Part shown: positions 3,682-59,333 of the stretch, piece after piece
Layout: each line of letters starts with the position of its first letter
How positions within the stretch are numbered: the first letter of the stretch is position 1
Virus record (IMG/VR): IMGVR_UViG_3300033571_009404
Coordinates: 1-64,000 of that record
Strand: one strand, 5' to 3'
Length of the DNA stretch: 64,000 bases
Made by a program: the position numbers and the translations under genes
The notes under the pieces: generated by a model
Database searches by the model: none
Told to the model about the DNA's origin: nothing
The model's input: only the letters and a program-made list of their open reading frames with translations

Positions 3682-4347
3682 ATGCGGTATAACGTCGGTG
3701 AAAAGTTGTATGTGGTGAACTTCGCCTTCCATGGCCAAGAACCTGAAGAGAACGCGCTGTATCAGTCTCCGTATCTCCGGGGCCTGATGCCGCGCATCTC
3801 CCAGATCCGTCTGAATCAGTTGACGGTGGAAGAACACCACAAGGTGCCGTATATCCATGATCCGGAACAAAAACTGGAACATGACGGTTACATCCTGAAA
3901 GATGACTCGGGTCAGGTTTTCTACAACCAATACCCTTCGTCCCACTATGGTCAATTCAGCGACCACATGGACTATCGCTTCCGGATGAAAGATCCGGATA
4001 CCGATGAGGCGCGTGAAGCCTACGTCAACGACATGGAACTCAACGACCCGCTCCCGCATGAATACATGTTGCTGGAGCAATTCCTGAAGGAACTGCGTCG
4101 TGGCATCACAGCAGTATTCGATGTCATCGCCAAGTATGAAGTCGCTGGTGTTGAGGAGATGGAGAACTATCGTCCTCTGCGCTGGCAGCGTGAGTACCAT
4201 GCGGTGTTGTCCGAGCTGTTGACTGAACTCAACAAGGCATTCAGGCACGCATTCGAAGGTCATGACTACGATCTGGTCCTGAAGCCCATCGATGAGAACG
4301 ATCCCGGCAGTATGAAGTTCTGGGAAGTGGAGTTCAAGACGGTGTAA
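3682..4347 (+). CDS. Hypothetical protein
   Basis: AAGGAG SD. Confidence 0.8.
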   Translation: MRYNVGEKLYVVNFAFHGQEPEENALYQSPYLRGLMPRISQIRLNQLTVEEHHKVPYIHDPEQKLEHDGYILKDDSGQVFYNQYPSSHYGQFSDHMDYRFRMKDPDTDEAREAYVNDMELNDPLPHEYMLLEQFLKELRRGITAVFDVIAKYEVAGVEEMENYRPLRWQREYHAVLSELLTELNKAFRHAFEGHDYDLVLKPIDENDPGSMKFWEVEFKTV

Positions 4348-6403: not shown

Positions 6404-6425
6404 AGAACACATATTACTAAGTTGA
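6404..6425 (+). promoter_or_regulatory. Putative phage early promoter motif
   Basis: AGAACACATATTACTAAGTTGA; one of six intergenic copies; core resembles the phiKZ early motif TATATTAC. Confidence 0.65.
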
Positions 6426-6477
6426 TAATAGAACGGTCTATTGTCCTCTTTTTAACTATGTTTAAGGAAGCCCTATA

Positions 6478-7109: not shown

Positions 7110-8843
7110 ATGTTTTCTCATCCATTTTATTTCTTCTGGCAAAACAAGTCTCCGTTTTCCAATTGGTATATCCGGAACTTCAAAGTCAGAGAAATGATCT
7201 TCAATTGCGTTGAGCAATACATGATGTACCAGAAGGCTGTGTTCTTTGGTGATTTGGAAACTGCTAAGCTTATCATGGCAGAATCCAAACCAAAGAAGCA
7301 GAAAGAACTGGGACGTCAGGTCAAAGGCTTCAATCGCATTGATTGGGATTCTGTAGTTGAGGATATCCTCTACACGGCTATCAAGGCCAAGTTCACCCAG
7401 CATCGTGATCTGGGTGAATTGATGCTAAGCATCACTGCGAAAGAATTCGTCGAAGCATCTCCGTATGACCGGATCTATGGTGTGCGATTGTCAATGAATG
7501 ACCCTCGCATCCAGTCAAAGAAATTATGGCTCGGCCTAAACAAGCTTGGGCGTGTGCTGACCCGAGTACGTAACTGGCTGTATGTCAAGAAGAAAGGAAA
7601 GAACATGATCGATCTGTCCCCGCATCATCCAGAAGTCATTATTCTGGATTTGACAGATGTGTTTGCCGATGCACAACGGCGGCTGGCACATACGGGTGAT
7701 GTGAATCTGCTGTTGCCCTCGATGGTCAGTAGCATCATGACGTGTGTGGAATGTCGTGATCCCGATATGACCCGGTTGGAAGTCTATGTCTCTGACTTGA
7801 TCGAACAGTTCAAGAATGATGGCATGCCAACTGAGGATGGTGAAATTGCCGCAGCTATCGCTAAAGACATCGGACGTAAGCTTGTCTATGAGATCGAGAA
7901 GATCGGCGGTTACGATGAGAACGATAATTTCGATTACGATGTCTATCGTGTGGAAATCTCCGGAGCTGTGGTACTGACTCGTCTGGATCCTGTGGGCGCT
8001 CGTGCTCAAGAGAAGAGGAAAGAATGGTTTCCTGATCCGGAAGCTGTTGGTAAATCGATTTCTTCAGGTAGCAGGGTTGACCATATGGTCATGGTCGATG
8101 ACGACGGCAATCCAATCAAGACGTCTGTAGTGGATATCCCTGAACCCACTCAAGAACAGAAGGATCATATTGCTTCTTTCGAAGTTAAACTTCCTTCGCT
8201 TGAAGAAATGGAGAATCATCCGCATCAAGGATACTTCCAAGGCCAACACAATGTGCAATATGCTGCTAAGTTAGGAGAAGTAGTCACTCCTGAACAGCAG
8301 CTGCAGAACTACGAAGCACATGAGCGTCGTGTGGTTATCGAGGAGAATGTCCCGGCTGCTGGTTTCCGTAGTCGTACGGAGTACGATCTCCCCAGTGAAG
8401 ACTTTACTTCATCGACTGTTGAGTCCAATATCAGCAACAAAATCGATAAGATGCTTCATAGCCCTAAGTTCAATATGAAGTTTGCTCCTTGCGATGATCT
8501 GGGAGAAATCTCTGTCAGATTGAACGGTCAAACCATTCAGAATCCAACACCTGAACAATTGTCCGAAGTTGCCAATAAGTTGGGTTTCGATGCAGCTGAC
8601 GTCATCATGGGACAAGACAAAGGTTATCGTGAGGTTCCCTTGTCTGAAGTCAAAGAGTCTCCTTATAAAGAGATTCTCGACAATGCGTTCCAGGATCAGG
8701 AAAGGGTTATCATCAATGCAGCTCCACGCTACGTACCCCTTGGTATCGTAGACGGCGATCAACAACAACAGAAGTGGAAAGACACTACAACAGGGGAAGT
8801 GCTTACCAACGAAGAACGATTTAATCGAGTTTCAAAAGACTAA
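7110..8843 (+). CDS. NADAR (YbiA-like) domain fused to a 412-aa unknown region
   Basis: FSNWY, EQYMMYQKA, KELGRQV, AKFTQH, VEASPYDRIYG and GLNKLG motifs in aa 1-158. Confidence 0.85.
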   Translation: MFSHPFYFFWQNKSPFSNWYIRNFKVREMIFNCVEQYMMYQKAVFFGDLETAKLIMAESKPKKQKELGRQVKGFNRIDWDSVVEDILYTAIKAKFTQHRDLGELMLSITAKEFVEASPYDRIYGVRLSMNDPRIQSKKLWLGLNKLGRVLTRVRNWLYVKKKGKNMIDLSPHHPEVIILDLTDVFADAQRRLAHTGDVNLLLPSMVSSIMTCVECRDPDMTRLEVYVSDLIEQFKNDGMPTEDGEIAAAIAKDIGRKLVYEIEKIGGYDENDNFDYDVYRVEISGAVVLTRLDPVGARAQEKRKEWFPDPEAVGKSISSGSRVDHMVMVDDDGNPIKTSVVDIPEPTQEQKDHIASFEVKLPSLEEMENHPHQGYFQGQHNVQYAAKLGEVVTPEQQLQNYEAHERRVVIEENVPAAGFRSRTEYDLPSEDFTSSTVESNISNKIDKMLHSPKFNMKFAPCDDLGEISVRLNGQTIQNPTPEQLSEVANKLGFDAADVIMGQDKGYREVPLSEVKESPYKEILDNAFQDQERVIINAAPRYVPLGIVDGDQQQQKWKDTTTGEVLTNEERFNRVSKD

Positions 8844-13319: not shown

Positions 13320-14183
13320 ATGCTGAAAGTTCAAGTCGATTACCACGATGATGCTTTGTTCGACAGCACAGACTTCGAGCCGAAGATCATTACTTTCCCT
13401 GGCGGGGAATGTCATGTGACTCTACCGGATGAATTGCTGGACAATCCACGTGCCCGTGCGTTTACCATTAAGACGCTGATCAAGAACGCCGACCACATCA
13501 TGCATTTGCTGATGGTTACAGACGCGATTCGTCGCCACTACGCGGGCTATCCGATTTTCCTACACATGCCGTACATTCCGTACGCACGTCAAGACCGCGT
13601 AGCCAACCACGGCGAGTCTTTGTCGGCTCGTGTGTTCTGTGATCTGATCAATGCTCAGAACTACGAAGTCGTCAGCGTCGCTGATCCGCACAGCCCGGTG
13701 GTGGAAGCGCTGCTGAACCGCATCGACGTGGTCGATCCGATTTACATGGTCGAAGAAGTGCTGCAAAGCGATCTCTTCAAGGACGGTGTGGCGCTGGTTG
13801 CACCGGACGCAGGTGCCCGAAAGCGTGTGCTGAATATGGCCATGGAAGTCAACGTCGAAGACGTGATCTTTGCTGACAAGGTACGCGATACCAAGACTGG
13901 CAAGATCACCGGTACCGTGGTCAACAACGAAGTTCCTCAAGGTAAAGCTATTCTGGTCGTGGATGACATCTGTGACGGTGGTCGTACCTTCCTGGAACTG
14001 GGTAAGGTCTTAAAGGAGAAGACCGACCAACCGCTGTACCTGTACATTACCCATGGCATCTTCAGCAAAGGTCTGGAAGAACTCGGTAAGTATTACGACC
14101 GTATCTTCACTGCCTACAACTGGAATGATGAAGAAGCCAACAATCCCCAACTGACCTTGATCAAGGAAGGAAATCTGCTGTGA
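13320..14183 (+). CDS. Ribose-phosphate pyrophosphokinase-like protein (probable ADPR-PP synthetase, Adps)
   Basis: FPGGE, PYIPYARQDR, DPHS, APDAGA and VDDICDGGRTF motifs; coupled to a Nampt-like gene. Confidence 0.9.
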   Translation: MLKVQVDYHDDALFDSTDFEPKIITFPGGECHVTLPDELLDNPRARAFTIKTLIKNADHIMHLLMVTDAIRRHYAGYPIFLHMPYIPYARQDRVANHGESLSARVFCDLINAQNYEVVSVADPHSPVVEALLNRIDVVDPIYMVEEVLQSDLFKDGVALVAPDAGARKRVLNMAMEVNVEDVIFADKVRDTKTGKITGTVVNNEVPQGKAILVVDDICDGGRTFLELGKVLKEKTDQPLYLYITHGIFSKGLEELGKYYDRIFTAYNWNDEEANNPQLTLIKEGNLL

Positions 14184-15883
14184 GCGAACAACAAGAAAAC
14201 ATCGTCGAGAAAGTTGCCAATGGTCTCGTGCCATTCAACCTGGCAGACTTCTACAAGACTGGTCACCCAGCCATGTATCCTCAGGGTACTGAAACCCTGG
14301 TGGCCAACTTTACCCCGCGCTCGGCCAAGTACGCTCCGGTACTGCCGGAATTGTTCGATAACAAGATCGTTTGGTTCGGCCTGCGTGGTTTCATCCAGGA
14401 ATGGCTGATCGATGTCTTCAATCGCGAGTTCTTCCAAAAACCCAAGGAAGAAGCCATCAAGAAGTACCGTCGTCGTATGGACACTTCTCTCGGTCCTGGT
14501 GCTGTCAGCATGAAGAAGCTGGAACTGCTCCATGATCTGGGTTACCTTCCGCTGGAAATTCGCGCCCTACCTGAAGGCGCTCGTGTGAACATCAAGGTAC
14601 CGCCGGTACTGTTCATCAACACCGCTGGCCCTGAACTGTCGTGGGTGGCTACCTACTTCGAAACTCTGATGTCCTGCGAAAGCTGGAAAATCTCGACGGT
14701 CGGTACCATTGCTTTCGAGTTCCACAAGCTGCTGACCTACTTCGCTGTGTCCACTGGCGCGCCTCTGGACTTTGTGCGTTGGCAAGGTCACGACTTCTCG
14801 TTCCGTGGCATGTCGGGTGTGCATGATGCAATGCGTACCTGCTCGGCTCACTTGCTGTCGTTCATGGGTACCGATACCATCCCGTCTATCGACTACCTGG
14901 AAGACTACTACGACGCCGATTCCGACAAGGAACTGGTGGGTGGTTCGATCCCAGCATCGGAACACAGTGTGATGGCTCTGCGCATTCTGCTGAAGCTGAA
15001 GGAACTGGCCAAGCTGCCGGAGAACGCAGGTCTGACTCACAAGCAACTACGTAAGGCAGCTGAGCTGGAAGTGGTGCGTGACTATGCCATCAAGGAATAC
15101 GACACTGGTCTGGTCTCCATGGTCTCGGATACCTTCGACTTCTGGAATGTGATCACTCACATCGCCAAGGTCCTGAAGCCTGAAATCATGCAACGCAAGC
15201 CGGATGTGTTCGGTAATGCCAAGGTCGTCTTCCGTCCTGATTCGGGTGATCCAGTGTACATCCTGACCGGTTACAAGAACAGTGAAATCGTTGCTAATGG
15301 CGATGGTACTTTCACTGTCAATGCAACTGGCAGAGTCATCCAAGATCACGAGCGTCGTGGTGCTGTGGAATGCCTGTGGGATATCTTCGGTGGTACCGAA
15401 ACCAGTCTCGGCTACAAGCTGCTGGATTCCCACGTCGGTCTGATCTACGGTGACTCGATCACTCTGCCGCGTGCTATGCGTATCCTGCGTCGTCTGCAAG
15501 ACAAGGGCTTCGCATCCACCAACGTAGTCTTCGGTATCGGTTCGTACACTTACAACATGCTCTCCCGTGACGTCTTCGGTTGGGCCATGAAGGCGGTGTA
15601 CGCGGTAGTCGATGGTGAGCCGGTTGAGATCTACAAGGATCCAGCAACTGACGACGGTATGAAGAAGTCGGCCAAGGGTCTGCTGCGTGTGGATAAGGTA
15701 GGTAACAACTACTTCCTGACGGAGAACTGCACCCCGGAAGAGTTCGAAGGCGGTGAACTCAAGCCGGTGTTCCGTAATGGTGAGATGTTGGTCAAGCCTA
15801 CCTTTAAGGAAGCCAAGGAACGTCTGCACCTTTCTTGGACGTGTCCGGAACCTAATAGCATCGTCTGGCAAGACGCTGCTTAA
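14180..15883 (+). CDS. Nicotinamide phosphoribosyltransferase-like protein (probable Namat)
   Basis: DFYKTGH, HDFSFRG, PASEHSV, VSDTFD, RPDSGDP, LIYGDSIT, KDPATD and KKSAKG motifs; GTGA overlap. Confidence 0.92.
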   Translation: MSEQQENIVEKVANGLVPFNLADFYKTGHPAMYPQGTETLVANFTPRSAKYAPVLPELFDNKIVWFGLRGFIQEWLIDVFNREFFQKPKEEAIKKYRRRMDTSLGPGAVSMKKLELLHDLGYLPLEIRALPEGARVNIKVPPVLFINTAGPELSWVATYFETLMSCESWKISTVGTIAFEFHKLLTYFAVSTGAPLDFVRWQGHDFSFRGMSGVHDAMRTCSAHLLSFMGTDTIPSIDYLEDYYDADSDKELVGGSIPASEHSVMALRILLKLKELAKLPENAGLTHKQLRKAAELEVVRDYAIKEYDTGLVSMVSDTFDFWNVITHIAKVLKPEIMQRKPDVFGNAKVVFRPDSGDPVYILTGYKNSEIVANGDGTFTVNATGRVIQDHERRGAVECLWDIFGGTETSLGYKLLDSHVGLIYGDSITLPRAMRILRRLQDKGFASTNVVFGIGSYTYNMLSRDVFGWAMKAVYAVVDGEPVEIYKDPATDDGMKKSAKGLLRVDKVGNNYFLTENCTPEEFEGGELKPVFRNGEMLVKPTFKEAKERLHLSWTCPEPNSIVWQDAA

Positions 15884-15887
15884 TTAG

Positions 15888-15925
15888 GGCATAAGGACCG
15901 GTGTGGGTAACTCCACACCGGTTTT
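15888..15925 (+). terminator. Hairpin/terminator preceded by GGCATAA tag
   Basis: ACCGGTGTGG-GTAACT-CCACACCGGT followed by TTT. Confidence 0.7.
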
Positions 15926-15943
15926 CAACTTTACTTTACTCTC

Positions 15944-16543
15944 ATGGAAAACAATCTTATCGTATTAGACGGTGATGGTGTATTGGTCGACTACCATCAC
16001 GCCTATGCTCAGGCATGGGGTAAAGCATTCGGTGAAGTACCTGCAATCAAAGATCCCGATGCTTACTGGGCATTGGATCGTTACGATGTTCGTAAGCTTC
16101 ATGGTGATGAACTGGATCACTTCAAGAAGCATATGGACTATGAATTCTGGGCTACCATGCCCGCCATGCCTGGTGCTGTAGAGGCATGTCAAAAACTGGT
16201 AGATGCAGGTTACAAATTGATCTGTGTAACCGCATTGGAAGATGAACACAAATCTGCGCGCTGGAAGAATCTGTTAGATCTGGGTATGCCTCTGGAAGGT
16301 ATAGTTTGTACAGGACATGGGAATGATACGGCCAGTCCCAAGGCATCAGTCTTAAGTGTCTTGAATCCGGTGGCATTCGCAGATGACTTCGTGCACTATA
16401 TGCGCGGCATTCCACCACACATCCATGCAGCTTTGATCATGCGTTCTAAGAACGGTACACCGAACGTCGGTCCTGATCTTAAGTTAGCTCATTCTCAACA
16501 TGCTGATATTCTTAGCTTTGCGGAATATTGGGTCAATCGTTAA
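15944..16543 (+). CDS. HAD-superfamily phosphatase (5'(3')-nucleotidase-like)
   Basis: LDGDGVLVD motif I, PAMPGA, CVT motif II, K, FADD motif IV. Confidence 0.85.
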   Translation: MENNLIVLDGDGVLVDYHHAYAQAWGKAFGEVPAIKDPDAYWALDRYDVRKLHGDELDHFKKHMDYEFWATMPAMPGAVEACQKLVDAGYKLICVTALEDEHKSARWKNLLDLGMPLEGIVCTGHGNDTASPKASVLSVLNPVAFADDFVHYMRGIPPHIHAALIMRSKNGTPNVGPDLKLAHSQHADILSFAEYWVNR

Positions 16544-17477: not shown

Positions 17478-17500
17478 AGATACATATCACTAAAGTGTAG
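17478..17500 (+). promoter_or_regulatory. Putative phage early promoter motif
   Basis: AGATACATATCACTAAAGTGTAG. Confidence 0.7.
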
Positions 17501-17532
17501 GTTAACCTAACTTACTCTTGTAAAGAGAAATC

Positions 17533-18638: not shown

Positions 18639-18992
18639 ATGCTGAAAGAGTTATTGAGTAAGCTCTTTAAACCTACAATAACCATTTTCGACACCCCTCA
18701 GGATAAGGTTGATGAATCCTTTCCGGATCGTATCTTTCTTATGGGAATGTACGGTATGATGGAATGCGTCACAGGCGATGATGAACAGTTTGATCATTTA
18801 TTCAACTCCGACATCTGGAGGTCTCATCCCAAGGATGTCCGTCAGAAGTTTAAAGACATGGCGCGTGGGTATGAATCAGGTCTGTGGTTAATGCCATATA
18901 TGACCATCCCTACTGAGGATGACTTCATGTTAGCCTGTGAAGAGTTCTCCAGTATCATCGGAAGCGAGATCAATGCCGTAGGTATTGGATAA
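18639..18992 (+). CDS. Hypothetical protein
   Basis: GAGGA SD, abuts upstream stop. Confidence 0.7.
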   Translation: MLKELLSKLFKPTITIFDTPQDKVDESFPDRIFLMGMYGMMECVTGDDEQFDHLFNSDIWRSHPKDVRQKFKDMARGYESGLWLMPYMTIPTEDDFMLACEEFSSIIGSEINAVGIG

Positions 18993-19003
18993 ATTTACCG
19001 TCC

Positions 19004-19210
19004 TAGCCTATAGTGTGTTGAGAAGAGAAATATCTTGAAGACGAGTGCCAGAATTGGTATATGGAACCGATAGCTACATGCTTGTGGTGCATGGATGTTG
19101 ATCGGTGAGTCGGTGGAGCACCACTGATCGGCTGTCATTGGCCGGACGCTAAGCGCAATTGGGGATTCGCATTCCCCCTCAGAGAGCAATGACCATACTT
19201 CGAGAGGCTA
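19004..19210 (+). ncRNA. Candidate structured non-coding RNA of unknown family
   Basis: No + ORF of 60 aa or more in the 276-bp gap; ends pair (TAGCCT/AGGCTA, AGTGTG/CATACT) and enclose several nested stems; followed by a terminator. Confidence 0.55.
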
Positions 19211-19212
19211 CA

Positions 19213-19246
19213 AAAAGCGGGAGGATTCGTCCTCTCGTTTTATGCC
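19213..19246 (+). terminator. Terminator hairpin followed by TTATGCC tag
   Basis: AAAAGCGGGAGGA-TTCG-TCCTCTCGTTTT then ATGCC. Confidence 0.75.
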
Positions 19247-19268
19247 CTTAACCTAAAAAGGAAAACAA

Positions 19269-19937
19269 ATGGGCCACTACAATTACCACGCATCTAAGTT
19301 CAAAATCAAGAAAGAGACGCCACCTGAAGTCATGGGTATACTGAACAGTCTCTTCGCACATGACCCTGATTACGAAGAATTCATCAAGGATCCGTCTAAC
19401 GATGTCTTGATTGATCGTAACTCCACGGTCTATAACTACAGAGAGTTTTGGCGTTTCTTCCAAGGCAATAGCGTCGGTATGTCTTGCAATGGTTGGCGGG
19501 TCAAAGAAGACATGGGTGACCATTGGTTGTTCGAGTCTCGTTCCAACTGCAAATACCAGAGTGGTATGGACATCTCGATCTGTGAATTCTTCTCCAAGCT
19601 CAAGCCGTGGTTGATCGCTGAAGAAGGTGATATCCTTCATCGCCAGATCTTTGAATCGGCTAACCGTGAAACACTCTTCTGTATCAAAGATGGAGAGGTT
19701 CAGATCGATACCAAGTCGGGATGTCGTTACGAGGTGGACTACGAGTATGTCTTAGATGATCGTCATCCCGTGCGACATGAGGATCTCTCTGATGATATTA
19801 ACATGAGTCCTTTGGGTCGTGGTCGCAATAATCCGAGCAACTGGATGCCGCCCTGGACAGTGAAAGAATTAGCACCCATCAATGAAGAGTTCGAAAAGAA
19901 TAAGCGCGGGCAGGCGGACTCTCATTGGGGTTTCTAA
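19269..19937 (+). CDS. Hypothetical protein
   Basis: AAGGA SD. Confidence 0.8.
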   Translation: MGHYNYHASKFKIKKETPPEVMGILNSLFAHDPDYEEFIKDPSNDVLIDRNSTVYNYREFWRFFQGNSVGMSCNGWRVKEDMGDHWLFESRSNCKYQSGMDISICEFFSKLKPWLIAEEGDILHRQIFESANRETLFCIKDGEVQIDTKSGCRYEVDYEYVLDDRHPVRHEDLSDDINMSPLGRGRNNPSNWMPPWTVKELAPINEEFEKNKRGQADSHWGF

Positions 19938-23399: not shown

Positions 23400-23438
23400 G
23401 GGTACGTGTTCGATTGGTGTTAAAAGATAGGAGTTAAT

Positions 23439-23819
23439 ATGGGGGTTCTTATCCAGGTCTCCAAATTTAATGCTGATTACTTCGATGACAACTTCATATA
23501 CGACGGATACAATAATCGAGTGTTGGATTTTGATGCAGCGCATCGTGCACTTGATGGCGTGAAGTCTGAGTTTTCCAATTACACACGTAGTCAGGCAATT
23601 ATTGAGAATGTTCTCTTTGTCCTGTCTGGCGTTCGTTGTTGGAGTAATGTTAGTCCAATGTGTTACGAACTAACTAAGGAAAACTTATTGGAATTGAAGC
23701 AGTGTATGCCTGAAGGATATACTGATAATCTGTGGGATGACTTCTTAGAAGACGTAGATGAAATTTTGTCTAAGTTAGAAAAATCTGATCATTACGTCTT
23801 CACAATTGACTGGGGTTAA
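23439..23819 (+). CDS. Hypothetical protein
   Basis: AGGAG SD. Confidence 0.7.
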   Translation: MGVLIQVSKFNADYFDDNFIYDGYNNRVLDFDAAHRALDGVKSEFSNYTRSQAIIENVLFVLSGVRCWSNVSPMCYELTKENLLELKQCMPEGYTDNLWDDFLEDVDEILSKLEKSDHYVFTIDWG

Positions 23820-23820
23820 T

Positions 23821-23854
23821 AGGATGGAGGGTGTAATGCCCTCCGTCTTATGAC
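23821..23854. terminator. Hairpin followed by TTATGAC tag
   Basis: AGGATGGAGGGTG-TAA-TGCCCTCCGTCTT then ATGAC. Confidence 0.65.
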
Positions 23855-23868
23855 TGAAAGAATTCAAG

Positions 23869-27388: not shown

Positions 27389-27410
27389 AGATCTATATAA
27401 CTGGCTTGAG
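27389..27410 (+). promoter_or_regulatory. Putative phage early promoter motif
   Basis: AGATCTATATAACTGGCTTGAG. Confidence 0.55.
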
Positions 27411-27433
27411 TAGTAAGAGAAGTAAAGTTTCAA

Positions 27434-29568: not shown

Positions 29569-29650
29569 GGCATAACTGACTGAGCTAGCTAGGATAGAAT
29601 CTTAATTGATTCTATCCTAGCTGCTCTTTCTCTTATGTCTTTTTTTTTTT
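29569..29650 (+). terminator. Long hairpin terminator tagged on both sides
   Basis: GGCATAA...15-bp perfect stem AGCTAGGATAGAATC/GATTCTATCCTAGCT...TTATGTC then T11. Confidence 0.8.
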
Positions 29651-33848: not shown

Positions 33849-34153
33849 AGCTATTTGTATTTCGTCCTAATGGACACGGTAGTGAGACGTTTATGGTTGT
33901 GCAAGAAGATGAAGCTGCTGCTCGGACTGCAGTAGATAATCTAATTGCTAAGAACAAGCAAGAATACCAAGAGTACCGACAACGATGCGATAAGGTGCGA
34001 GGTCTACGTGGTACTCGTACTTACATTCCACCTGGTCCTGAGTATCGATATCCTGAGCCAGTGTATGAATTGAATTCTGATGGCTGGGGTACTGATTACT
34101 ACGAGATGGAAGTCTACGAACCCGGTCAAGTGGCCACTAACGAGAATTCGTGA
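33845..34153 (+). CDS. Hypothetical protein
   Basis: ATGA overlap at 33845. Confidence 0.7.
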   Translation: MKLFVFRPNGHGSETFMVVQEDEAAARTAVDNLIAKNKQEYQEYRQRCDKVRGLRGTRTYIPPGPEYRYPEPVYELNSDGWGTDYYEMEVYEPGQVATNENS

Positions 34154-35898: not shown

Positions 35899-37149
35899 AT
35901 GGAAGATACTCGCGTTTTAGCACGCATCGTCCGTATCGACGATGTTTTACCTCACCCCAATGCCGACAAGATGCAACTGGGCATCGTCGGTGGTTGGCAG
36001 TGCTGCATCAAACTGGACGAATTTAAGAAGGGCGATCTGGCCTTGTACTGCGAGATCGATTCTCTCTTGCCTGTCTCGGTCCCTGAATTTGCTTTCCTGG
36101 AAGACCGTAAGGAATCCATCAAGGTAGTCAACGAAGTCGTCTACTCCCGTATCAAGACGATCCGGCTGCGTAAGGAACTGTCCCAAGGTCTGTTGGGTAA
36201 GATCCCACGTCAACTGGGTAAAGTAGTTGAAGGTCAAGACGTGACTGAAGCACTTGGCATCATCAAATACGAGAAGAAGCAAACTCGTGTCAGTGACGGT
36301 CCTGAACTGAAACCTGGTCTGATCAAACGCTTCTGCGAATGGCTGAGGAAAGACATCAAGGATGATCTGCTGCTGCCATGGCCTTACTTCATCAAGAAGA
36401 CAGAACAAGAGCGCGTTCAGAATCTGCATTCCCAGTACCTCAAAGCAGTTGAGGATGGTGAGACCTTTGAAGAATCGGTGAAGTTAAACGGTGAATCGTT
36501 TACTGCCTTCTTCGTATTCAAAGATGGTGTCCATGGTCACGCTGGTGTTTGCTCACGCAACTATGAGATCCAGACTACTGATGTAGTTTGGACCTGGAAG
36601 CAATCCTTCCGTTATTGGCTGTCTCGCTTCGTGGGTGGTAACTCTCGTATTCTGCGGACCCGGCACTTTGTCTGGCCTGATTGGCGTACTGGCGTCAAAG
36701 CCGATGATGATCCATTCGTACGCCACTGGAAACGTTTGGATCTGGCTAAGAAGCTGGAAGACTACCAGTACAAGTCAGGTGTACAGATTGCCATTCAGGG
36801 TGAGTTAGCTGGTCCTGGACATCAGAGCAATAAGGAAGGTCTGGAGACTGCTGACGTCTACGTGTATCAAGTATACGTGATCGATTCTGACTTCGGTATG
36901 AAGATGGGTCTGCTATTACCAGAAGACGCACGTCGGGTGACAGAGGAACTTGGTCTGAAGTACGTTCCTGTTCCTGAGAAGAACGCTAAGCTACCACCTA
37001 CCATCAAGGAAGCCTTGCTGCGTGCGGATGGTCCGGCTTATTTCGATAAGAGCCGCAGTCGTGAAGGTCTGGTCTACAAGAGCAATACCCGTGACTTCTC
37101 GTTCAAGGTGATTAGTAACAAGTTCTTGGAAAAGAACGAGGACGAATAA
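35899..37149 (+). CDS. ATP-dependent RNA ligase, DRB0094/Rnl2-like family
   Basis: HPNADK..GGWQC, YCEIDS, LRKELSQGL, KLNG motif I, CSRN, QGE, EGLVYK, FKVISNKF. Confidence 0.9.
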   Translation: MEDTRVLARIVRIDDVLPHPNADKMQLGIVGGWQCCIKLDEFKKGDLALYCEIDSLLPVSVPEFAFLEDRKESIKVVNEVVYSRIKTIRLRKELSQGLLGKIPRQLGKVVEGQDVTEALGIIKYEKKQTRVSDGPELKPGLIKRFCEWLRKDIKDDLLLPWPYFIKKTEQERVQNLHSQYLKAVEDGETFEESVKLNGESFTAFFVFKDGVHGHAGVCSRNYEIQTTDVVWTWKQSFRYWLSRFVGGNSRILRTRHFVWPDWRTGVKADDDPFVRHWKRLDLAKKLEDYQYKSGVQIAIQGELAGPGHQSNKEGLETADVYVYQVYVIDSDFGMKMGLLLPEDARRVTEELGLKYVPVPEKNAKLPPTIKEALLRADGPAYFDKSRSREGLVYKSNTRDFSFKVISNKFLEKNEDE

Positions 37150-37162
37150 CCTAGAAAATTGA

Positions 37163-37185
37163 AGACACTTATTATTAAAGTGTAG
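37163..37185 (+). promoter_or_regulatory. Putative phage early promoter motif
   Basis: AGACACTTATTATTAAAGTGTAG. Confidence 0.55.
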
Positions 37186-37271
37186 TAGGAAACAGGAGTT
37201 GCTTACAGAGAACTCCTGTCGTAGCACCTTTAGGCAACTGTGCCGCTAACTGAGTGATGAAAGGAATGATC

Positions 37272-39927: not shown

Positions 39928-39959
39928 GGGAGAGGGCTTAGGCTCTCTCCCTTTATGCC
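39928..39959 (+). terminator. Hairpin followed by TTTATGCC tag
   Basis: GGGAGAGGGC-TTAG-GCTCTCTCCC-TTTATGCC. Confidence 0.75.
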
Positions 39960-40006
39960 TTCTTATTTTTACTGTACTGTTCTATTGGATGTAGCTATTA
40001 ACTAAC

Positions 40007-44640: not shown

Positions 44641-44677
44641 ATAAATAGGGAGAGGGCAACTTCTCCCTATTTATGCC
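44641..44677 (+). terminator. GNRA hairpin ending in TTATGCC tag
   Basis: ATAAATAGGGAGAGG-GCAA-CTTCTCCCTATTTAT then GCC. Confidence 0.75.
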
Positions 44678-44695
44678 CATCGTAAAGGAAATGTA

Positions 44696-48190: not shown

Positions 48191-48365
48191 GGGTAAGTAT
48201 AAGTCACCTCCGAAGTATCCCGAATTGCAAGGGGATGTACTGAAGAACAAAGCAAAAGACTTTATGCTGACCGTGCCACCCACTGCTGTGGGTGGTAACT
48301 TCGATCAAAAGAGAAACATCGCCTACTTTGGTAAAGAGGCTATCGATAAGAAAGAACCCCAATGA
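48183..48365 (+). CDS. Small hypothetical protein
   Basis: AGGAG SD before ATG 48183. Confidence 0.6.
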   Translation: MAKGKYKSPPKYPELQGDVLKNKAKDFMLTVPPTAVGGNFDQKRNIAYFGKEAIDKKEPQ

Positions 48366-52827: not shown

Positions 52828-53028
52828 CGTTATTCGTTCCTCGGAATTCGTATATTTCTCGACGAGGTCGATGGATCAAGGCACCAGGTCAATCGCTTTG
52901 TACAGAAATTCAGTGGCACACTCACGTATTTGTACAAGCTCATGCGTCAGGTGCTGTCCCTACCATCATCCATCATGTTGTTAAGTCACTCTATCCAAGA
53001 GATGTTTAAATCAGCTTAGGAACTAATA

Positions 53029-55735: not shown

Positions 55736-55763
55736 GATCTCCTCTTTCTTTTTAGAAATAATT

Positions 55764-55785
55764 AGACACATATCACTAGCTTGAG
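55764..55785 (+). promoter_or_regulatory. Putative phage early promoter motif
   Basis: AGACACATATCACTAGCTTGAG. Confidence 0.7.
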
Positions 55786-55827
55786 TAACAAATGCTCTTT
55801 ATGACTAAAACGAAAGAGGAGTAACAA

Positions 55828-59145: not shown

Positions 59146-59333
59146 AAACAATCAATCTCTTGTGCGCCTTAAGTTCTTGGTGCATGGAGAAATCCAAGCT
59201 TTGATGAAACGGTTCCCTTACCGTCGCATTGAAGACCTGATAGCTTATCACATGGTTCGTAGTGATCAAGTCATTGTGACCAAGATGATGAGCACTTATT
59301 TGAAACAACTACCGGTACCTAGGAGAATCAGAA

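What the first reader, a model, noticed from the sequence alone, without database searches (positions are those of the whole stretch)
19004..19246. Candidate novel ~210-nt multi-stem ncRNA with a T-arm-like hairpin and its own terminator
Seen: this is the longest gap in the window with no + ORF in the track (18993-19268), and it is filled with nested complementarity. Closing stems: TAGCCT(19004)/AGGCTA(19205) and AGTGTG(19012)/CATACT(19194). Hairpin: TGCCA-GAAT-TGGTA (19046-59). A junction closed by GATAGCT(19069)/GGCTGTC(19130) holds CATGC/GCATG (19077-93) and GATCGGT...GGTG-GAG-CACC-ACTGATC (19100-29). The 3' domain has GGGGA-TTCGCAT-TCCCC (19161-77; 5-bp stem and 7-nt TTCG loop, like a T-arm). 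An alternative 7-bp helix GTCATTG(19134)/CAATGAC(19187), ending in ...ACCA, overlaps and competes with the 19130 helix. A UUCG terminator follows. G-U pairs favour the + strand. I cannot match it to tRNA, tmRNA, RNase P or a riboswitch. Inference: a phage structured RNA, such as a tRNA mimic or decoy for anticodon nucleases, a ribozyme, or a switchable RNA.
Basis: partly seen in the sequence, partly recalled or inferred. Interest (0 to 1): 0.82.

Follow-up and report, generated by a model that had tools for sequence, protein, structure and literature searches.

The report
tRNA-like RNA gene in jumbo phages
The 276-base gap holds a gene-sized, strongly conserved RNA that is built like a transfer RNA with extra arms and a knotted-away anticodon loop. 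It recurs unannotated in cultured Ralstonia and Xanthomonas jumbo phages, so it is a new, testable tRNA mimic of unknown target.

Summary
Window 19033-19205 (+) is the core of a conserved structured RNA. It is followed by a terminator (19216-19239) and then a TATG late-promoter-like motif.

Homologues lie in intergenic DNA of an uncultivated relative (L004), Ralstonia phages RP12/RP31 and FLC4-3B/FLC1-1B, and Xanthomonas phages RTH11 and LucasX. None is annotated. ARAGORN calls no tRNA, and Rfam 15 gives no credible match.

Across the six sequences (three clades), hand-aligned helices are 199/199 canonical, and 21 of 34 pairs show compensatory changes. A tool count on a model-based alignment agrees: 91.8% paired against 74.9% in shuffles, 0/500.

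The RNA is tRNA-derived. It has:
- an acceptor-like closing helix;
- U8;
- a class-II (tRNA-Leu-type) D arm with G18G19;
- a variable-arm-like hairpin;
- a T arm, canonical GGUUCGAAUCC in RP12 and FLC4-3B.

It also has two extra hairpins. Its anticodon-like loop is fully paired to a 7-nt insert 3' of the T arm (a pseudoknot with covariation), so it cannot decode.

The best reading is a trans-acting tRNA mimic. Its target is unknown and expression is not shown.

The parts
18991..18999 (+). AAATTTACC, a candidate phiKZ-type middle-promoter box. If it is used, the start site would lie near 19019-19022.
   Evidence: It matches the phiKZ consensus AAanTTACc, which is centred about -24 (PMC4666361). 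It is the only AAANTTACC in the window. It is not conserved in L004, so this is weak.
19009..19018 (+). TATAGTGTGT box, the conserved 5' boundary of the module. It may be a -10-like promoter element or a 5' leader signal.
   Evidence: It is 10/10 identical in L004, while the sequence upstream is unrelated. The X13 relative reads TATAAT (G19013 to A). The sigma-70 scan lists TGGATA-17-TATAGT. Its function was not tested.
19033..19040 (+). P1 5' strand, the acceptor-like closing helix. It pairs with 19198-19205.
   Evidence: It is 8 bp in five lineages and 7/8 in FLC4-3B. Seven of 8 pairs are compensatory in the hand table and 6 of 8 in the tool count. The outer U..A is invariant.
19043..19065 (+). 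tRNA core 5' half. It comprises GAG (tRNA positions 5-7), U8, G9, and a class-II D arm (stem 19048-50/19062-64, 11-nt loop with G18G19 at 19056-57), then N26.
   Evidence: The D stem is CCA/UGG here and GUG/CAC in RP12 and LucasX, so all three pairs are compensatory. The RP12 copy is 22/22 identical to the D-arm region of Bacillus-phage tRNA-Leu genes.
19066..19106 (+). P3, a variable arm. Its base is ACCG/CGGU and its tip is CATGC-7 nt-GCATG (19077-19093).
   Evidence: A hairpin sits at this place in all six sequences, with unrelated sequence and length; L004 has CUAC-GUAA-GUAG and FLC4-3B has GGC-GUAA-GCC.
19109..19128 (+). P4 hairpin, GUC.GUGG / CCAC.GAU with loop AGCA. It abuts P5 directly.
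   Evidence: It covaries across clades: GGCUGUG/CACAGUC in RP12 and CCAGAG/CUCUGG in RTH11. Five of 7 pairs are compensatory.
19129..19144 (+). P5, an anticodon-arm-like hairpin. It has a 4-bp stem CGGC/GCCG and an 8-nt loop (19133-19140).
   Evidence: Two of 4 pairs are compensatory. In the tool count, helix 4 is 100% paired.
19134..19140 (+). Pseudoknot 5' strand, GUCAUUG. It is the P5 loop and pairs with 19187-19193.
   Evidence: The pairing is 7/7 in all six sequences. U-A to A-U and U-A to G-C are compensatory changes, and there are three wobble-compatible single changes.
19147..19155 (+). P6, a short variable-arm-like hairpin (CGC-UAA-GCG).
   Evidence: Relatives have a 3-4 bp stem with a U-N-A loop, and 2 of 3 pairs are compensatory. 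In the X13 relative a longer hairpin replaces it.
19161..19177 (+). P7, the T arm: a 5-bp stem with the 7-nt loop UUCGCAU.
   Evidence: The stem is GGGGA, GGAGA, GGAGG, GAUGG or GCGGG, each with a matching 3' strand. The loop is UUCGAAU in RP12 and FLC4-3B, UUCGACU in L004 and RTH11, and UUCGAGU in LucasX. The window copy lacks A58.
19178..19197 (+). 3' insert. It comprises CUC (tRNA positions 66-68, pairing with GAG 19043-45), the linker AGAGAG, the pseudoknot 3' strand CAAUGAC (19187-19193), and CAUA.
   Evidence: CUCAGAR is invariant in all six sequences. The pseudoknot strand covaries with the P5 loop.
19198..19205 (+). P1 3' strand, CUUCGAGA. The final A may act as a discriminator-like A73.
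   Evidence: In RP12 and FLC4-3B the helix is followed by CC(G).
19216..19239 (+). Intrinsic terminator hairpin: 10 bp with a UUCG loop, followed by a U run.
   Evidence: L004 shows compensatory changes. Nearly the same hairpin follows the RP12 copy. Similar hairpins followed by TTTATGCC also occur at 39928-39960 and 44646-44680.
19241..19250 (+). TATGCCCTTA, a late-promoter-like TATG motif for the next gene (19269-19937). The start site would be G19244.
   Evidence: It is conserved in L004 and L011. In phiKZ, late promoters are TATG with the start at the G (PMC4666361). TTATGC is enriched after hairpins in gaps of this window.

Best explanation
Window ~19020-19241 (+) encodes a stable, non-decoding, tRNA-derived RNA. 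It has a core of about 173 nt between the two strands of P1, plus a short leader and a terminator.

Shown:
- It belongs to a conserved family present in at least three clades of jumbo phages.
- It is under much stronger nucleotide constraint than the neighbouring genes.
- Its helices are kept by compensatory changes.
- Its 5' and 3' parts are homologous in layout to a class-II tRNA. These are the inner acceptor pairs GAG/CUC, U8, a 3-bp D stem with an 11-nt loop carrying G18G19, a short variable-arm-like hairpin, and a 5-bp T stem with a UUCG-type 7-nt loop.
- Between the D arm and the T arm it carries four hairpins instead of two.
- The 7 loop bases of the anticodon-like hairpin pair with an insert placed between the T arm and the 3' strand of the closing helix.

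Inferred:
- The D-loop/T-loop 'elbow' and an acceptor-like helix are presented to the cell, while no anticodon is available.
- The RNA therefore acts in trans as a tRNA mimic. It would bind or occupy a factor that recognises tRNA by shape rather than by anticodon.
- Possible factors are a processing or modification enzyme, an anticodon-independent synthetase such as LeuRS, an RNA-repair enzyme, or a tRNA-directed host defence nuclease.
- The result would be either decoy action or recruitment.

Transcription probably comes from the upstream operon or from a promoter in 18991-19018, and it ends at the 19216-19239 terminator. The target and the direction of the effect are unknown.
For: Homologues:
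- L004/L005: 79% identity over 242 nt.
- RP12/RP31 and FLC4-3B/FLC1-1B by blastn, with model R1 scoring 55.8 and 45.3 bits.
- RTH11 and LucasX.
- All lie in stretches with no annotated feature.

Constraint:
- The element is 181/214 identical to L004, and its core is 52/54.
- Codon third positions of the flanking homologous genes are only 43% and 32% identical.

Covariation:
- Hand table: 199/199 cells canonical, 21/34 pairs compensatory, 0/2000 shuffles as good, and 2/279936 clade-level permutations as good.
- Tool count on the model alignment: 91.8% paired against 74.9% in shuffles. Fifteen pairs change on both sides, against 9.9. The score is 0.521 against 0.198, 0/500 shuffles reach it, and slid controls give 31-55%.

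tRNA likeness:
- The D-arm region is 22-nt identical to annotated tRNA-Leu genes, and the T-arm region hits annotated tRNA-Tyr genes.
- The D stem covaries.
- The T loop is UUCGAAU in RP12 and FLC4-3B.
- In LucasX the element sits inside a tRNA gene cluster.

Independence from neighbours:
- The flanking genes differ in every clade.

Strand:
- G-U pairs and folding z-scores favour +.
Against: - No transcript evidence. The one RNA-labelled run held a single 155-nt, depth-5 contig that the tool flagged as probably DNA.
- The family rests on six sequences in three clades. The helices were delimited by hand.
- Folding energy is only marginally better than shuffles (z about -1.2 to -2.5).
- The window copy has C instead of A at T-loop position 58. 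P1 is not contiguous with the T stem. NCCA is not conserved. So classical tRNA-enzyme recognition is not guaranteed.
- No conserved protein partner lies next to it.
- The close relative L011 lacks it at the syntenic site, so it is dispensable for some relatives.
- The X13 contig that carries the 3' domain continues with unrelated sequence where the P1 3' strand is expected.
Confidence: 0.55

Rival explanations
1. It is the RNA subunit or scaffold of an RNA-repair particle, analogous to Y RNA (YrlA) with Ro and RtcB. The tRNA-like module would tether or guide a phage RNA ligase or kinase.
For: In RP12 and FLC4-3B the element lies between a small P-loop protein and an RNA ligase of phrog_14301. 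Bacterial yrlA genes lie in rsr-rtcB operons and mimic tRNA (PMC4201824; PMC7824862). The window also encodes an RNA ligase (35899-37149) and a HAD/PNK-like protein.
Against: - The ligase adjacency is limited to the Ralstonia clade. No homologue of that ligase or of the upstream proteins is in the window, L004 or L011.
- No TROVE/Ro domain was found among the proteins scanned, which were only a subset of the window's ORFs.
- YrlA has the permuted order T-acceptor-D, whereas this RNA has D before T.
- Rfam gives no Y RNA hit.
Confidence: 0.12
2. It is a processing signal. A tRNA-shaped module at the end of an operon would recruit RNase P, RNase Z or the CCA-adding enzyme to define RNA ends (tRNA punctuation, as for mascRNA). 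The RNA itself would be a by-product.
For: - It lies between the last ORF of an operon and the terminator, with no terminator in front of it.
- An invariant U precedes a 7-bp version of P1 and an invariant A follows it, like U(-1) and A73.
- M. smegmatis YrlA is cut by RNase P and gets CCA added (PMC4201824).
Against: - A terminator already defines the 3' end.
- The T stem and P1 are separated by a 2-nt/17-nt internal loop, so the 12-bp acceptor/T stack that RNase P measures is absent.
- The extra conserved parts (P4, P5, the pseudoknot) are unnecessary for punctuation.
Confidence: 0.12
3. It is a cis-acting leader, a riboswitch or attenuator. Formation of P1 would decide whether the terminator forms, controlling read-through into the next gene.
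For: - A P1-closed multi-helix junction is followed at once by a terminator and then an RBS.
- CGAGAGG (19201-07) can pair with the terminator 3' strand: 7/7 in the window and 6/7 in L004.
- Positions 19201, 19218 and 19237 change together.
- The core is nearly invariant (52/54).
Against: - The alternative fold is about 9.5 kcal/mol worse (-70.5 against -80.0) and competes for the terminator 3' strand, which is kinetically unfavourable.
- The downstream gene differs in every clade.
- A TATG promoter-like motif follows the terminator.
- In RTH11 and LucasX the terminator is more than 140 nt away.
- No riboswitch model matches.
Confidence: 0.07
4. It is a decaying tRNA-Leu pseudogene with insertions, kept only by linkage, or it is a DNA-level site.
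For: It resembles tRNA-Leu D and T arms. It sits in a tRNA cluster in LucasX. ARAGORN rejects it. L011 lacks it at the syntenic site.
Against: - It is 85% identical where synonymous sites are at 32-43%.
- Compensatory changes occur also in the non-tRNA helices P1, P4 and the pseudoknot, across three clades.
- G-U pairs are strand-specific.
Confidence: 0.05
5. It encodes a small protein on the minus strand: ORF 19189-18995, 64 aa.
For: The first 29 codons are shared with a 34-aa minus-strand ORF in L004, and three of the seven substitutions are synonymous in that frame.
Against: - The frame breaks after 29 codons through 10- and 6-nt indels.
- Three of 7 substitutions at third positions is the chance expectation.
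- 25 of 28 third positions are unchanged, against about 43% identity in real genes.
- The start would be TTG with no Shine-Dalgarno sequence.
- The ORF is antisense to every neighbouring gene.
- The same substitutions are compensatory in RNA helices.
Confidence: 0.02

Closest known systems
Class-II tRNA (tRNA-Leu type), including phage-encoded tRNA-Leu genes
   Same: It has U8, a 3-bp D stem with an 11-nt loop carrying A14 and G18G19, a short stem-loop in front of the T arm, a 5-bp T stem with a UUCGAAU-type loop, GAG/CUC at acceptor positions 5-7/66-68, and a 7-8-bp end helix followed by A. The RP12 copy is 22/22 identical to annotated tRNA-Leu D-arm DNA.
   Different: - Four hairpins lie between the D and T arms instead of two.
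- About 20 nt are inserted between the T arm and the 3' strand of the end helix.
- The anticodon-like loop is fully base-paired.
- There is no conserved NCCA.
- ARAGORN does not call it, and in RP12 tRNAscan-SE did not either (PMC5468394).
- The core is 162-208 nt, against about 85 nt for a tRNA.
Bacterial Y RNA YrlA (Ro60-associated tRNA mimic; PMC4201824)
   Same: It is a non-coding RNA whose D- and T-arm-like hairpins mimic the tRNA elbow. It is closed by a stem formed by the 5' and 3' ends. Y RNAs are found in some phages and lie next to RNA-repair genes in some genomes.
   Different: In YrlA the order is T arm, acceptor-like hairpin, D arm, and the end stem takes the anticodon-stem position and binds Ro60. 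Here the order is D then T, the end stem is on the acceptor side, no Ro/TROVE gene was found, there is an extra pseudoknot, and Rfam gives no hit.
tmRNA tRNA-like domain
   Same: It has a T arm and an acceptor-like helix formed by the two ends of a longer RNA, with pseudoknots in between. It does not decode with an anticodon.
   Different: There is no tag reading frame and no conserved ACCA end. This RNA keeps a full D arm, which tmRNA lacks. It is far shorter, and ARAGORN finds no tmRNA.
Plant-virus 3' tRNA-like structures such as TYMV TLS (from general knowledge, not tested here)
   Same: It is a viral tRNA mimic in which a pseudoknot builds part of the tRNA-like fold.
   Different: The plant-virus structures sit at the 3' end of RNA genomes, end in CCA and are aminoacylated. 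Here the element is a DNA-phage gene with an internal pseudoknot that masks the anticodon-like loop.
Phage T4 stable RNAs 'species 1 and 2' (rnaC, rnaD) of the tRNA gene cluster (from memory, a lead only)
   Same: They are small stable phage RNAs of unknown function, encoded among tRNA genes, with tRNA-like processing.
   Different: No sequence or structure comparison could be made with the tools here.

Membership tests
tRNA | Recognised by a tRNA gene finder | tested here: not met
   ARAGORN finds nothing in the window and calls no gene at the element in L004, L017, L018, L019 or L020. tRNAscan-SE found only tRNA-Asn in RP12 (PMC5468394).
tRNA | D arm with G18G19 and T arm with a 5-bp stem and a UUCRANY loop (the elbow) | tested here: met
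   The D stem covaries, and the loop GAAUUGGUAUA is conserved. The T stem covaries. The T loop is UUCGAAU, UUCGACU or UUCGAGU in five of six copies; the window copy has UUCGCAU.
tRNA | Anticodon arm (5 bp, 7-nt loop with U33) directly after position 26, with a free anticodon | tested here: not met
   Two extra hairpins (P3, P4) follow position 26. The anticodon-like loop is 7/7 paired to a downstream strand in all six sequences. Its second base is U, G or A.
tRNA | 7-bp acceptor stem continuous with the T stem and ending in N73-CCA | tested here: not met
   Only GAG/CUC adjoins the T stem. P1 is separated from it by a 2-nt/17-nt internal loop. After P1 come GGC, GGC, CCG, CCG, UGA or UUU.
Y RNA / YrlA | Encoded next to a Ro60 (TROVE) gene and bound by Ro60 | tested here: not met
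   No TROVE domain was found in the flanking or large window proteins that were scanned, which were only a subset of the window's ORFs, nor in the neighbours in RP12, FLC4-3B, RTH11 or LucasX. Binding is not testable here.
Y RNA / YrlA | Arm order T - acceptor-like hairpin - D, matched by the Rfam model | tested here: not met
   The order here is D ... T. The window element gives no Rfam match at E <= 10. L004 gives only four chance-level hits, to mir-71 (both strands), RAGATH-12 and MIR529 (E 2.5-3.9).
tmRNA | Tag-peptide reading frame and a tRNA-Ala-like acceptor ending in ACCA | tested here: not met
   ARAGORN's tmRNA search is negative, and no conserved ACCA is present.
Riboswitch / transcription attenuator | Conserved association with one gene family and a competitive anti-terminator | tested here: not met
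   The downstream genes differ by clade. The alternative pairing is 9.5 kcal/mol worse. There is no Rfam hit.
Aminoacylatable viral tRNA-like structure | Charged by a synthetase at a 3' CCA end | not testable with these tools
   This needs 3'-end mapping and charging assays. An invariant A follows P1, and CC follows it in RP12 and FLC4-3B only.

The most novel reading that the evidence does not exclude
The RNA is a tRNA-Leu-derived counter-defence or takeover device. Its preserved elbow and acceptor-like end would let it be taken for a tRNA by a host factor that does not read the anticodon. Such a factor could be a tRNA-directed immune nuclease or transferase, LeuRS, RNase P or the CCA-adding enzyme. 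The pseudoknot keeps it off the decoding path. This would be a new mechanistic class of phage RNA decoy, and it could be studied in cultured Ralstonia and Xanthomonas jumbo phages.
Probability: 0.2. Interest if true: 0.85.

Novelty: new variant of a known kind. Interest (0 to 1): 0.6.

Why it matters
tRNA mimicry by non-coding RNAs is known from only a few families: tmRNA, Y RNAs and viral 3' tRNA-like structures. This would add a phage-encoded family with its own architecture, namely a class-II tRNA core with extra arms and an anticodon-like loop locked in a pseudoknot.

It is missed by tRNA finders, by Rfam and by the annotation of at least four groups of published jumbo-phage genomes (RP12/RP31, FLC4-3B/FLC1-1B, RTH11, LucasX). 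Those phages have culturable hosts, so expression, processing, partners and phenotype can be tested directly.

Many bacterial defences act on tRNAs, and jumbo phages invest heavily in tRNA supply and RNA repair. A shape-only tRNA mimic is therefore a plausible new player in that conflict. At the least, it gives a covariation-supported model for annotating these genomes.

Tried and rejected
- Rfam at gathering and at E <= 10, on the window and on L004, gave nothing meaningful.
- ARAGORN found nothing.
- A first blastn with a 1.7-kb query against GenBank phages found nothing. Only the short element-only query found the Ralstonia hits.
- Exact-pattern scans of viral, metagenome and genome collections with five conserved blocks returned only the source contig or nothing.
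- Protein-guided searches with the flanking genes found only L004, L005 and L006, plus distant relatives without the element.
- Sequencing-run search and read laying gave no transcript evidence. They did give one partial, diverged DNA relative, X13.
- blastn against E. coli genomes and plasmids found no match, so the element shows no similarity to E. coli genomes or to the plasmid collection; the real host is unknown and its RNAs could not be tested.
- Models R1 and R2 found no second copy in the 64-kb window or in about 100 kb of related loci. R1's weak extra hits were terminator hairpins.
- The hit in Pseudomonas phage D6 lies between tRNA genes and was not a family member.
- A group I or II intron splitting a kinase-ligase gene in RP12 was considered and dropped. 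There is no intron model hit, and the context is not conserved.
- A CsrA-type GGA sponge was considered and dropped, because GGA counts are near expectation and not conserved.
- A minus-strand ORF and the riboswitch reading were examined and ranked low; see the rival explanations.
Full report
**Source and setting.** The window is the first 64 kb of a 310-kb IMG/VR contig, IMGVR_UViG_3300033571_009404. It is a jumbo phage distantly related to Erwinia, Ralstonia and Salmonella jumbo phages.

Nearly all genes are on the + strand. The gap 18993-19268 lies between a 117-aa ORF and a 222-aa ORF of phrog_4334. It is the longest ORF-free stretch in a greedy tiling of the window.

**Direct checks.**
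- ARAGORN finds no tRNA or tmRNA in the window.
- Rfam 15 gives no match for the window at gathering thresholds or at E <= 10. The L004 homologue gives only chance-level hits.
- Folding of the + strand is only modestly better than shuffles. The z-score is -2.54 with the terminator and -1.9 to -2.0 without it. The minus strand gives -0.76.

On energy alone the finding would be weak.

**Expression.** Two run searches and the single read-laying run gave no transcript evidence. The 'RNA-Seq' wastewater run holds one 155-nt contig (19042-19195) at depth about 5, which the tool judged to be probably DNA.

One DNA run, X13, holds a diverged relative. In it:
- 19014-19073 is identical to the window.
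- The sequence just upstream (19003-19009) is rewritten.
- G19013 is A, so TATAGT reads TATAAT.
- The P3 region carries most of the differences.
- P6 is replaced by a longer hairpin.

**First homologue.** The 222-aa protein has a 63%-identical relative on an 8.4-kb JGI contig (L004, with an identical Logan copy, L005). There the gene has no upstream gap.

However, a 264-nt gap 1.2 kb further upstream matches window 19026-19264 at 79%, and it lies between different genes. The aligned element is 181/214 identical, and its core is 52/54. Codon third positions of the two shared genes are only 43% and 32% identical.

So the nucleotide sequence itself is under selection. The 5' limit of similarity is the box TATAGTGTGT (19009-19018). 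The 3' limit is TTTATGCCCTTA.

**Punctuation.** The terminator hairpin followed by TTTATGCC recurs at 39928-39960 and 44646-44680, and in the relative L011. In phiKZ, late promoters are TATG with the start at the G (PMC4666361).

The 3' end of the module is therefore the phage's generic terminator plus next-promoter signal. No terminator separates the upstream ORF from the element, so at the least it is carried on the upstream operon's transcript.

Candidate promoter elements of its own are AAATTTACC (18991-18999) and the TATAGT box. AAATTTACC matches the phiKZ middle consensus and is unique in the window. Neither was tested.

**More homologues.** A blastn with only the element as query hit unannotated DNA in Ralstonia phages RP12/RP31 and FLC4-3B/FLC1-1B. 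A model built from the window and L004 scored these at 55.8 and 45.3 bits. Using them as queries added Xanthomonas phages RTH11 and LucasX.

All copies lie in gaps of 285-635 nt. The same searches hit annotated tRNA genes:
- 22 nt of the RP12 copy are identical to the D-arm region of Bacillus-phage tRNA-Leu genes.
- The T-arm region of the FLC4-3B copy matches Aeromonas-phage tRNA-Tyr genes.

**Architecture, in window coordinates.**
- P1: 19033-40/19198-205.
- Two unpaired bases, then GAG (19043-45), which pairs with CUC (19178-80) directly after the T stem. These correspond to tRNA positions 5-7/66-68.
- U8 and G9.
- A class-II D arm with stem 19048-50/19062-64 and an 11-nt loop carrying G18G19.
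- P3 (19066-19106), a hairpin that varies in length and sequence.
- P4 (19109-28).
- P5 (19129-44), with an 8-nt loop.
- P6 (19147-55).
- The T arm (19161-77).
- The insert CUC-AGAGAG-CAAUGAC-CAUA.
- The P1 3' strand.

The seven bases 19134-40 of the P5 loop pair with 19187-93. This forms an H-type pseudoknot, with one base crossing the 7-bp helix.

**Covariation.** In a hand-made table of these helices for the six sequences, all 199 cells are canonical pairs. Of the 34 pairs, 21 show changes on both sides:

| Helix | Pairs with compensatory change |
|---|---|
| P1 | 7 of 8 |
| P4 | 5 of 7 |
| P5 | 2 of 4 |
| Pseudoknot | 2 of 7, plus three wobble-compatible changes |
| P6 | 2 of 3 |
| P7 | 3 of 5 |

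No shuffle out of 2000 did as well. Only 2 of 279,936 clade-level permutations did. The D stem switches completely, from CCA/UGG to GUG/CAC.

An independent count used an alignment made by model R2, whose RNAalifold structure lacks the pseudoknot and P4. It gives 91.8% paired cells against 74.9% in shuffles. Fifteen pairs change on both sides against 9.9, and the score is 0.521 against 0.198 (0/500). Slid controls give 31-55%.

R2 finds no further copy in 165 kb of held sequence, including the whole window.

- The T-arm-like hairpin, the 7-bp helix GTCATTG/CAATGAC, the CATGC/GCATG hairpin, the GGTG/CACC core and the terminator are confirmed.
- The outer stems TAGCCT/AGGCTA and AGTGTG/CATACT, the junction GATAGCT/GGCTGTC and the stem GATCGGT/ACTGATC are not conserved, or they clash with covarying helices.
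- The 7-bp helix does not compete with its neighbour. Both form together.

**What it is not.**
- It fails the defining tests for a decoding tRNA. No finder calls it, there is no free anticodon arm after position 26, the acceptor is not continuous with the T stem, and NCCA is not conserved.
- It is not a YrlA-type Y RNA. The arm order differs, no Ro/TROVE gene was found among the proteins scanned, and Rfam gives no hit.
- It is not a tmRNA.
- A riboswitch-like reading is weak. The possible anti-terminator is 9.5 kcal/mol worse than the P1-plus-terminator fold, and the downstream genes differ in each clade.
- A minus-strand peptide is unlikely. The frame breaks, and third positions are far too conserved.

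**Context.** No protein neighbour is conserved across clades.

| Phage(s) | Context of the element |
|---|---|
| Ralstonia phages (RP12, FLC4-3B) | Between a P-loop 99-aa protein and an RNA ligase of phrog_14301 |
| LucasX | Inside a tRNA cluster, in front of an HNH endonuclease |
| RTH11 | Near tRNA-Leu, a CYTH protein, an NMNAT-Nudix protein and a nicotinate phosphoribosyltransferase |
| Window | 3 kb after a PRPP-synthetase, NAMPT and HAD cluster |

None of the Ralstonia or Xanthomonas neighbours has a homologue in the window. The relative L011 lacks the element at the syntenic place. The RNA is thus an independent, accessory module.

**Mechanism.**
- Shown: this is a conserved, covarying, tRNA-derived fold that keeps the elbow-forming D and T loops and an acceptor-like end helix. 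Its anticodon-like loop is sequestered.
- Inferred: it works in trans as a shape mimic of tRNA for a factor that does not read the anticodon, acting as a decoy or as a recruiting handle.

I put about 0.9 on 'conserved structured tRNA-like RNA element'. I put about 0.55 on the trans-acting mimic reading as a whole. Which partner it engages I leave open. The alternatives (RNA-repair scaffold, processing signal, attenuator, pseudogene, small ORF) are ranked in the rival list.

**Novelty and score.** tRNA-like non-coding RNAs are a known kind. This family is not in Rfam and is not annotated in the published genomes that carry it; the RP12 paper found only tRNA-Asn. Its pseudoknot-masked design differs from tmRNA, Y RNAs and viral 3' tRNA-like structures. 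I rate it a new variant of a known kind, with interest 0.6.

Noticed in passing
window 39928-39960, 44646-44680, 19216-19250, 23825-23855, 29590-29640: There is a recurrent intergenic punctuation signal. It is a G+C-rich hairpin, often GGGAGAGG.../...CCTCTCCC, followed at once by (T)TTATG(C/A)C. It looks like a terminator fused to a phiKZ-type TATG late promoter. The same TTTATGCCCTTAA occurs in relative L011 (about 4200-4215).
   Followed up: partly
window 6405-6440, 17478-17510, 27395-27430, 37165-37200, 55760-55795: A roughly 30-nt motif occurs in five gaps: AATT..AGA-CAC-ATAT(C/T)AC-TA...TG..GTA. It resembles the phiKZ early/middle TTAC-type promoters and is probably this phage's own early or middle promoter class.
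   Followed up: partly
window 7110-8843, 13320-16543, 35899-37149: The window carries an NAD and RNA conflict toolkit. It includes a NADAR-domain protein, PRPP synthetase with nicotinamide phosphoribosyltransferase (an NAD-reconstitution pair), a HAD/PNK-like phosphatase, and an Rnl-type RNA ligase with a PHA02142 OB domain.
   Followed up: partly
L019 2664-2830 and L020 2666-3095: In the Xanthomonas phages the gap continues for 150-430 nt after the tRNA-like element. It shows further conserved blocks (AAUGAAGUGUC, GCU(A/G)AGGGUGCAGGCU) before a terminator plus TTATGC. This may be a second non-coding RNA domain.
   Followed up: no
L017 2620-2700 and L018 2625-2701: The annotated start of RP12 ORF259 is the ATG inside the TTATGC motif. 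The RNA-ligase family match begins only at residue 28, so the true start is probably downstream. The intervening leader holds a conserved GGTGG.G.TGGGATTCGAAAC stretch that again looks like a T arm.
   Followed up: partly
run X13, contig 3 (laid on window 19158-19196): The diverged relative's contig carries GTCATTGG, a longer P6-like hairpin and the T-arm/pseudoknot region. After ...CCAT it continues with CAGTTATCTTTTTACTG... instead of the P1 3' strand. This could be an insertion, a second copy or a chimeric contig, and it is unexplained.
   Followed up: no
window 23403-23827 vs L011 15095-15518: This 126-aa ORF region is 88% identical at the DNA level between the window and L011. That is far above the 66-80% of the other shared genes, including thymidylate synthase.
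   Followed up: no
L011 2618-3184: The related 298-kb phage contig encodes a sigma-70-family protein (regions 2 and 4). Part of this phage group may therefore redirect host RNA polymerase, which bears on whether the TATAGT/TATAAT box is a real -10 element.
   Followed up: no
window 33849-34079, 48191-48361, 52828-53028, 59146-59333: These are other long stretches without a called + ORF (171-231 nt). By eye they look coding-like rather than structured. They were not examined further.
   Followed up: no
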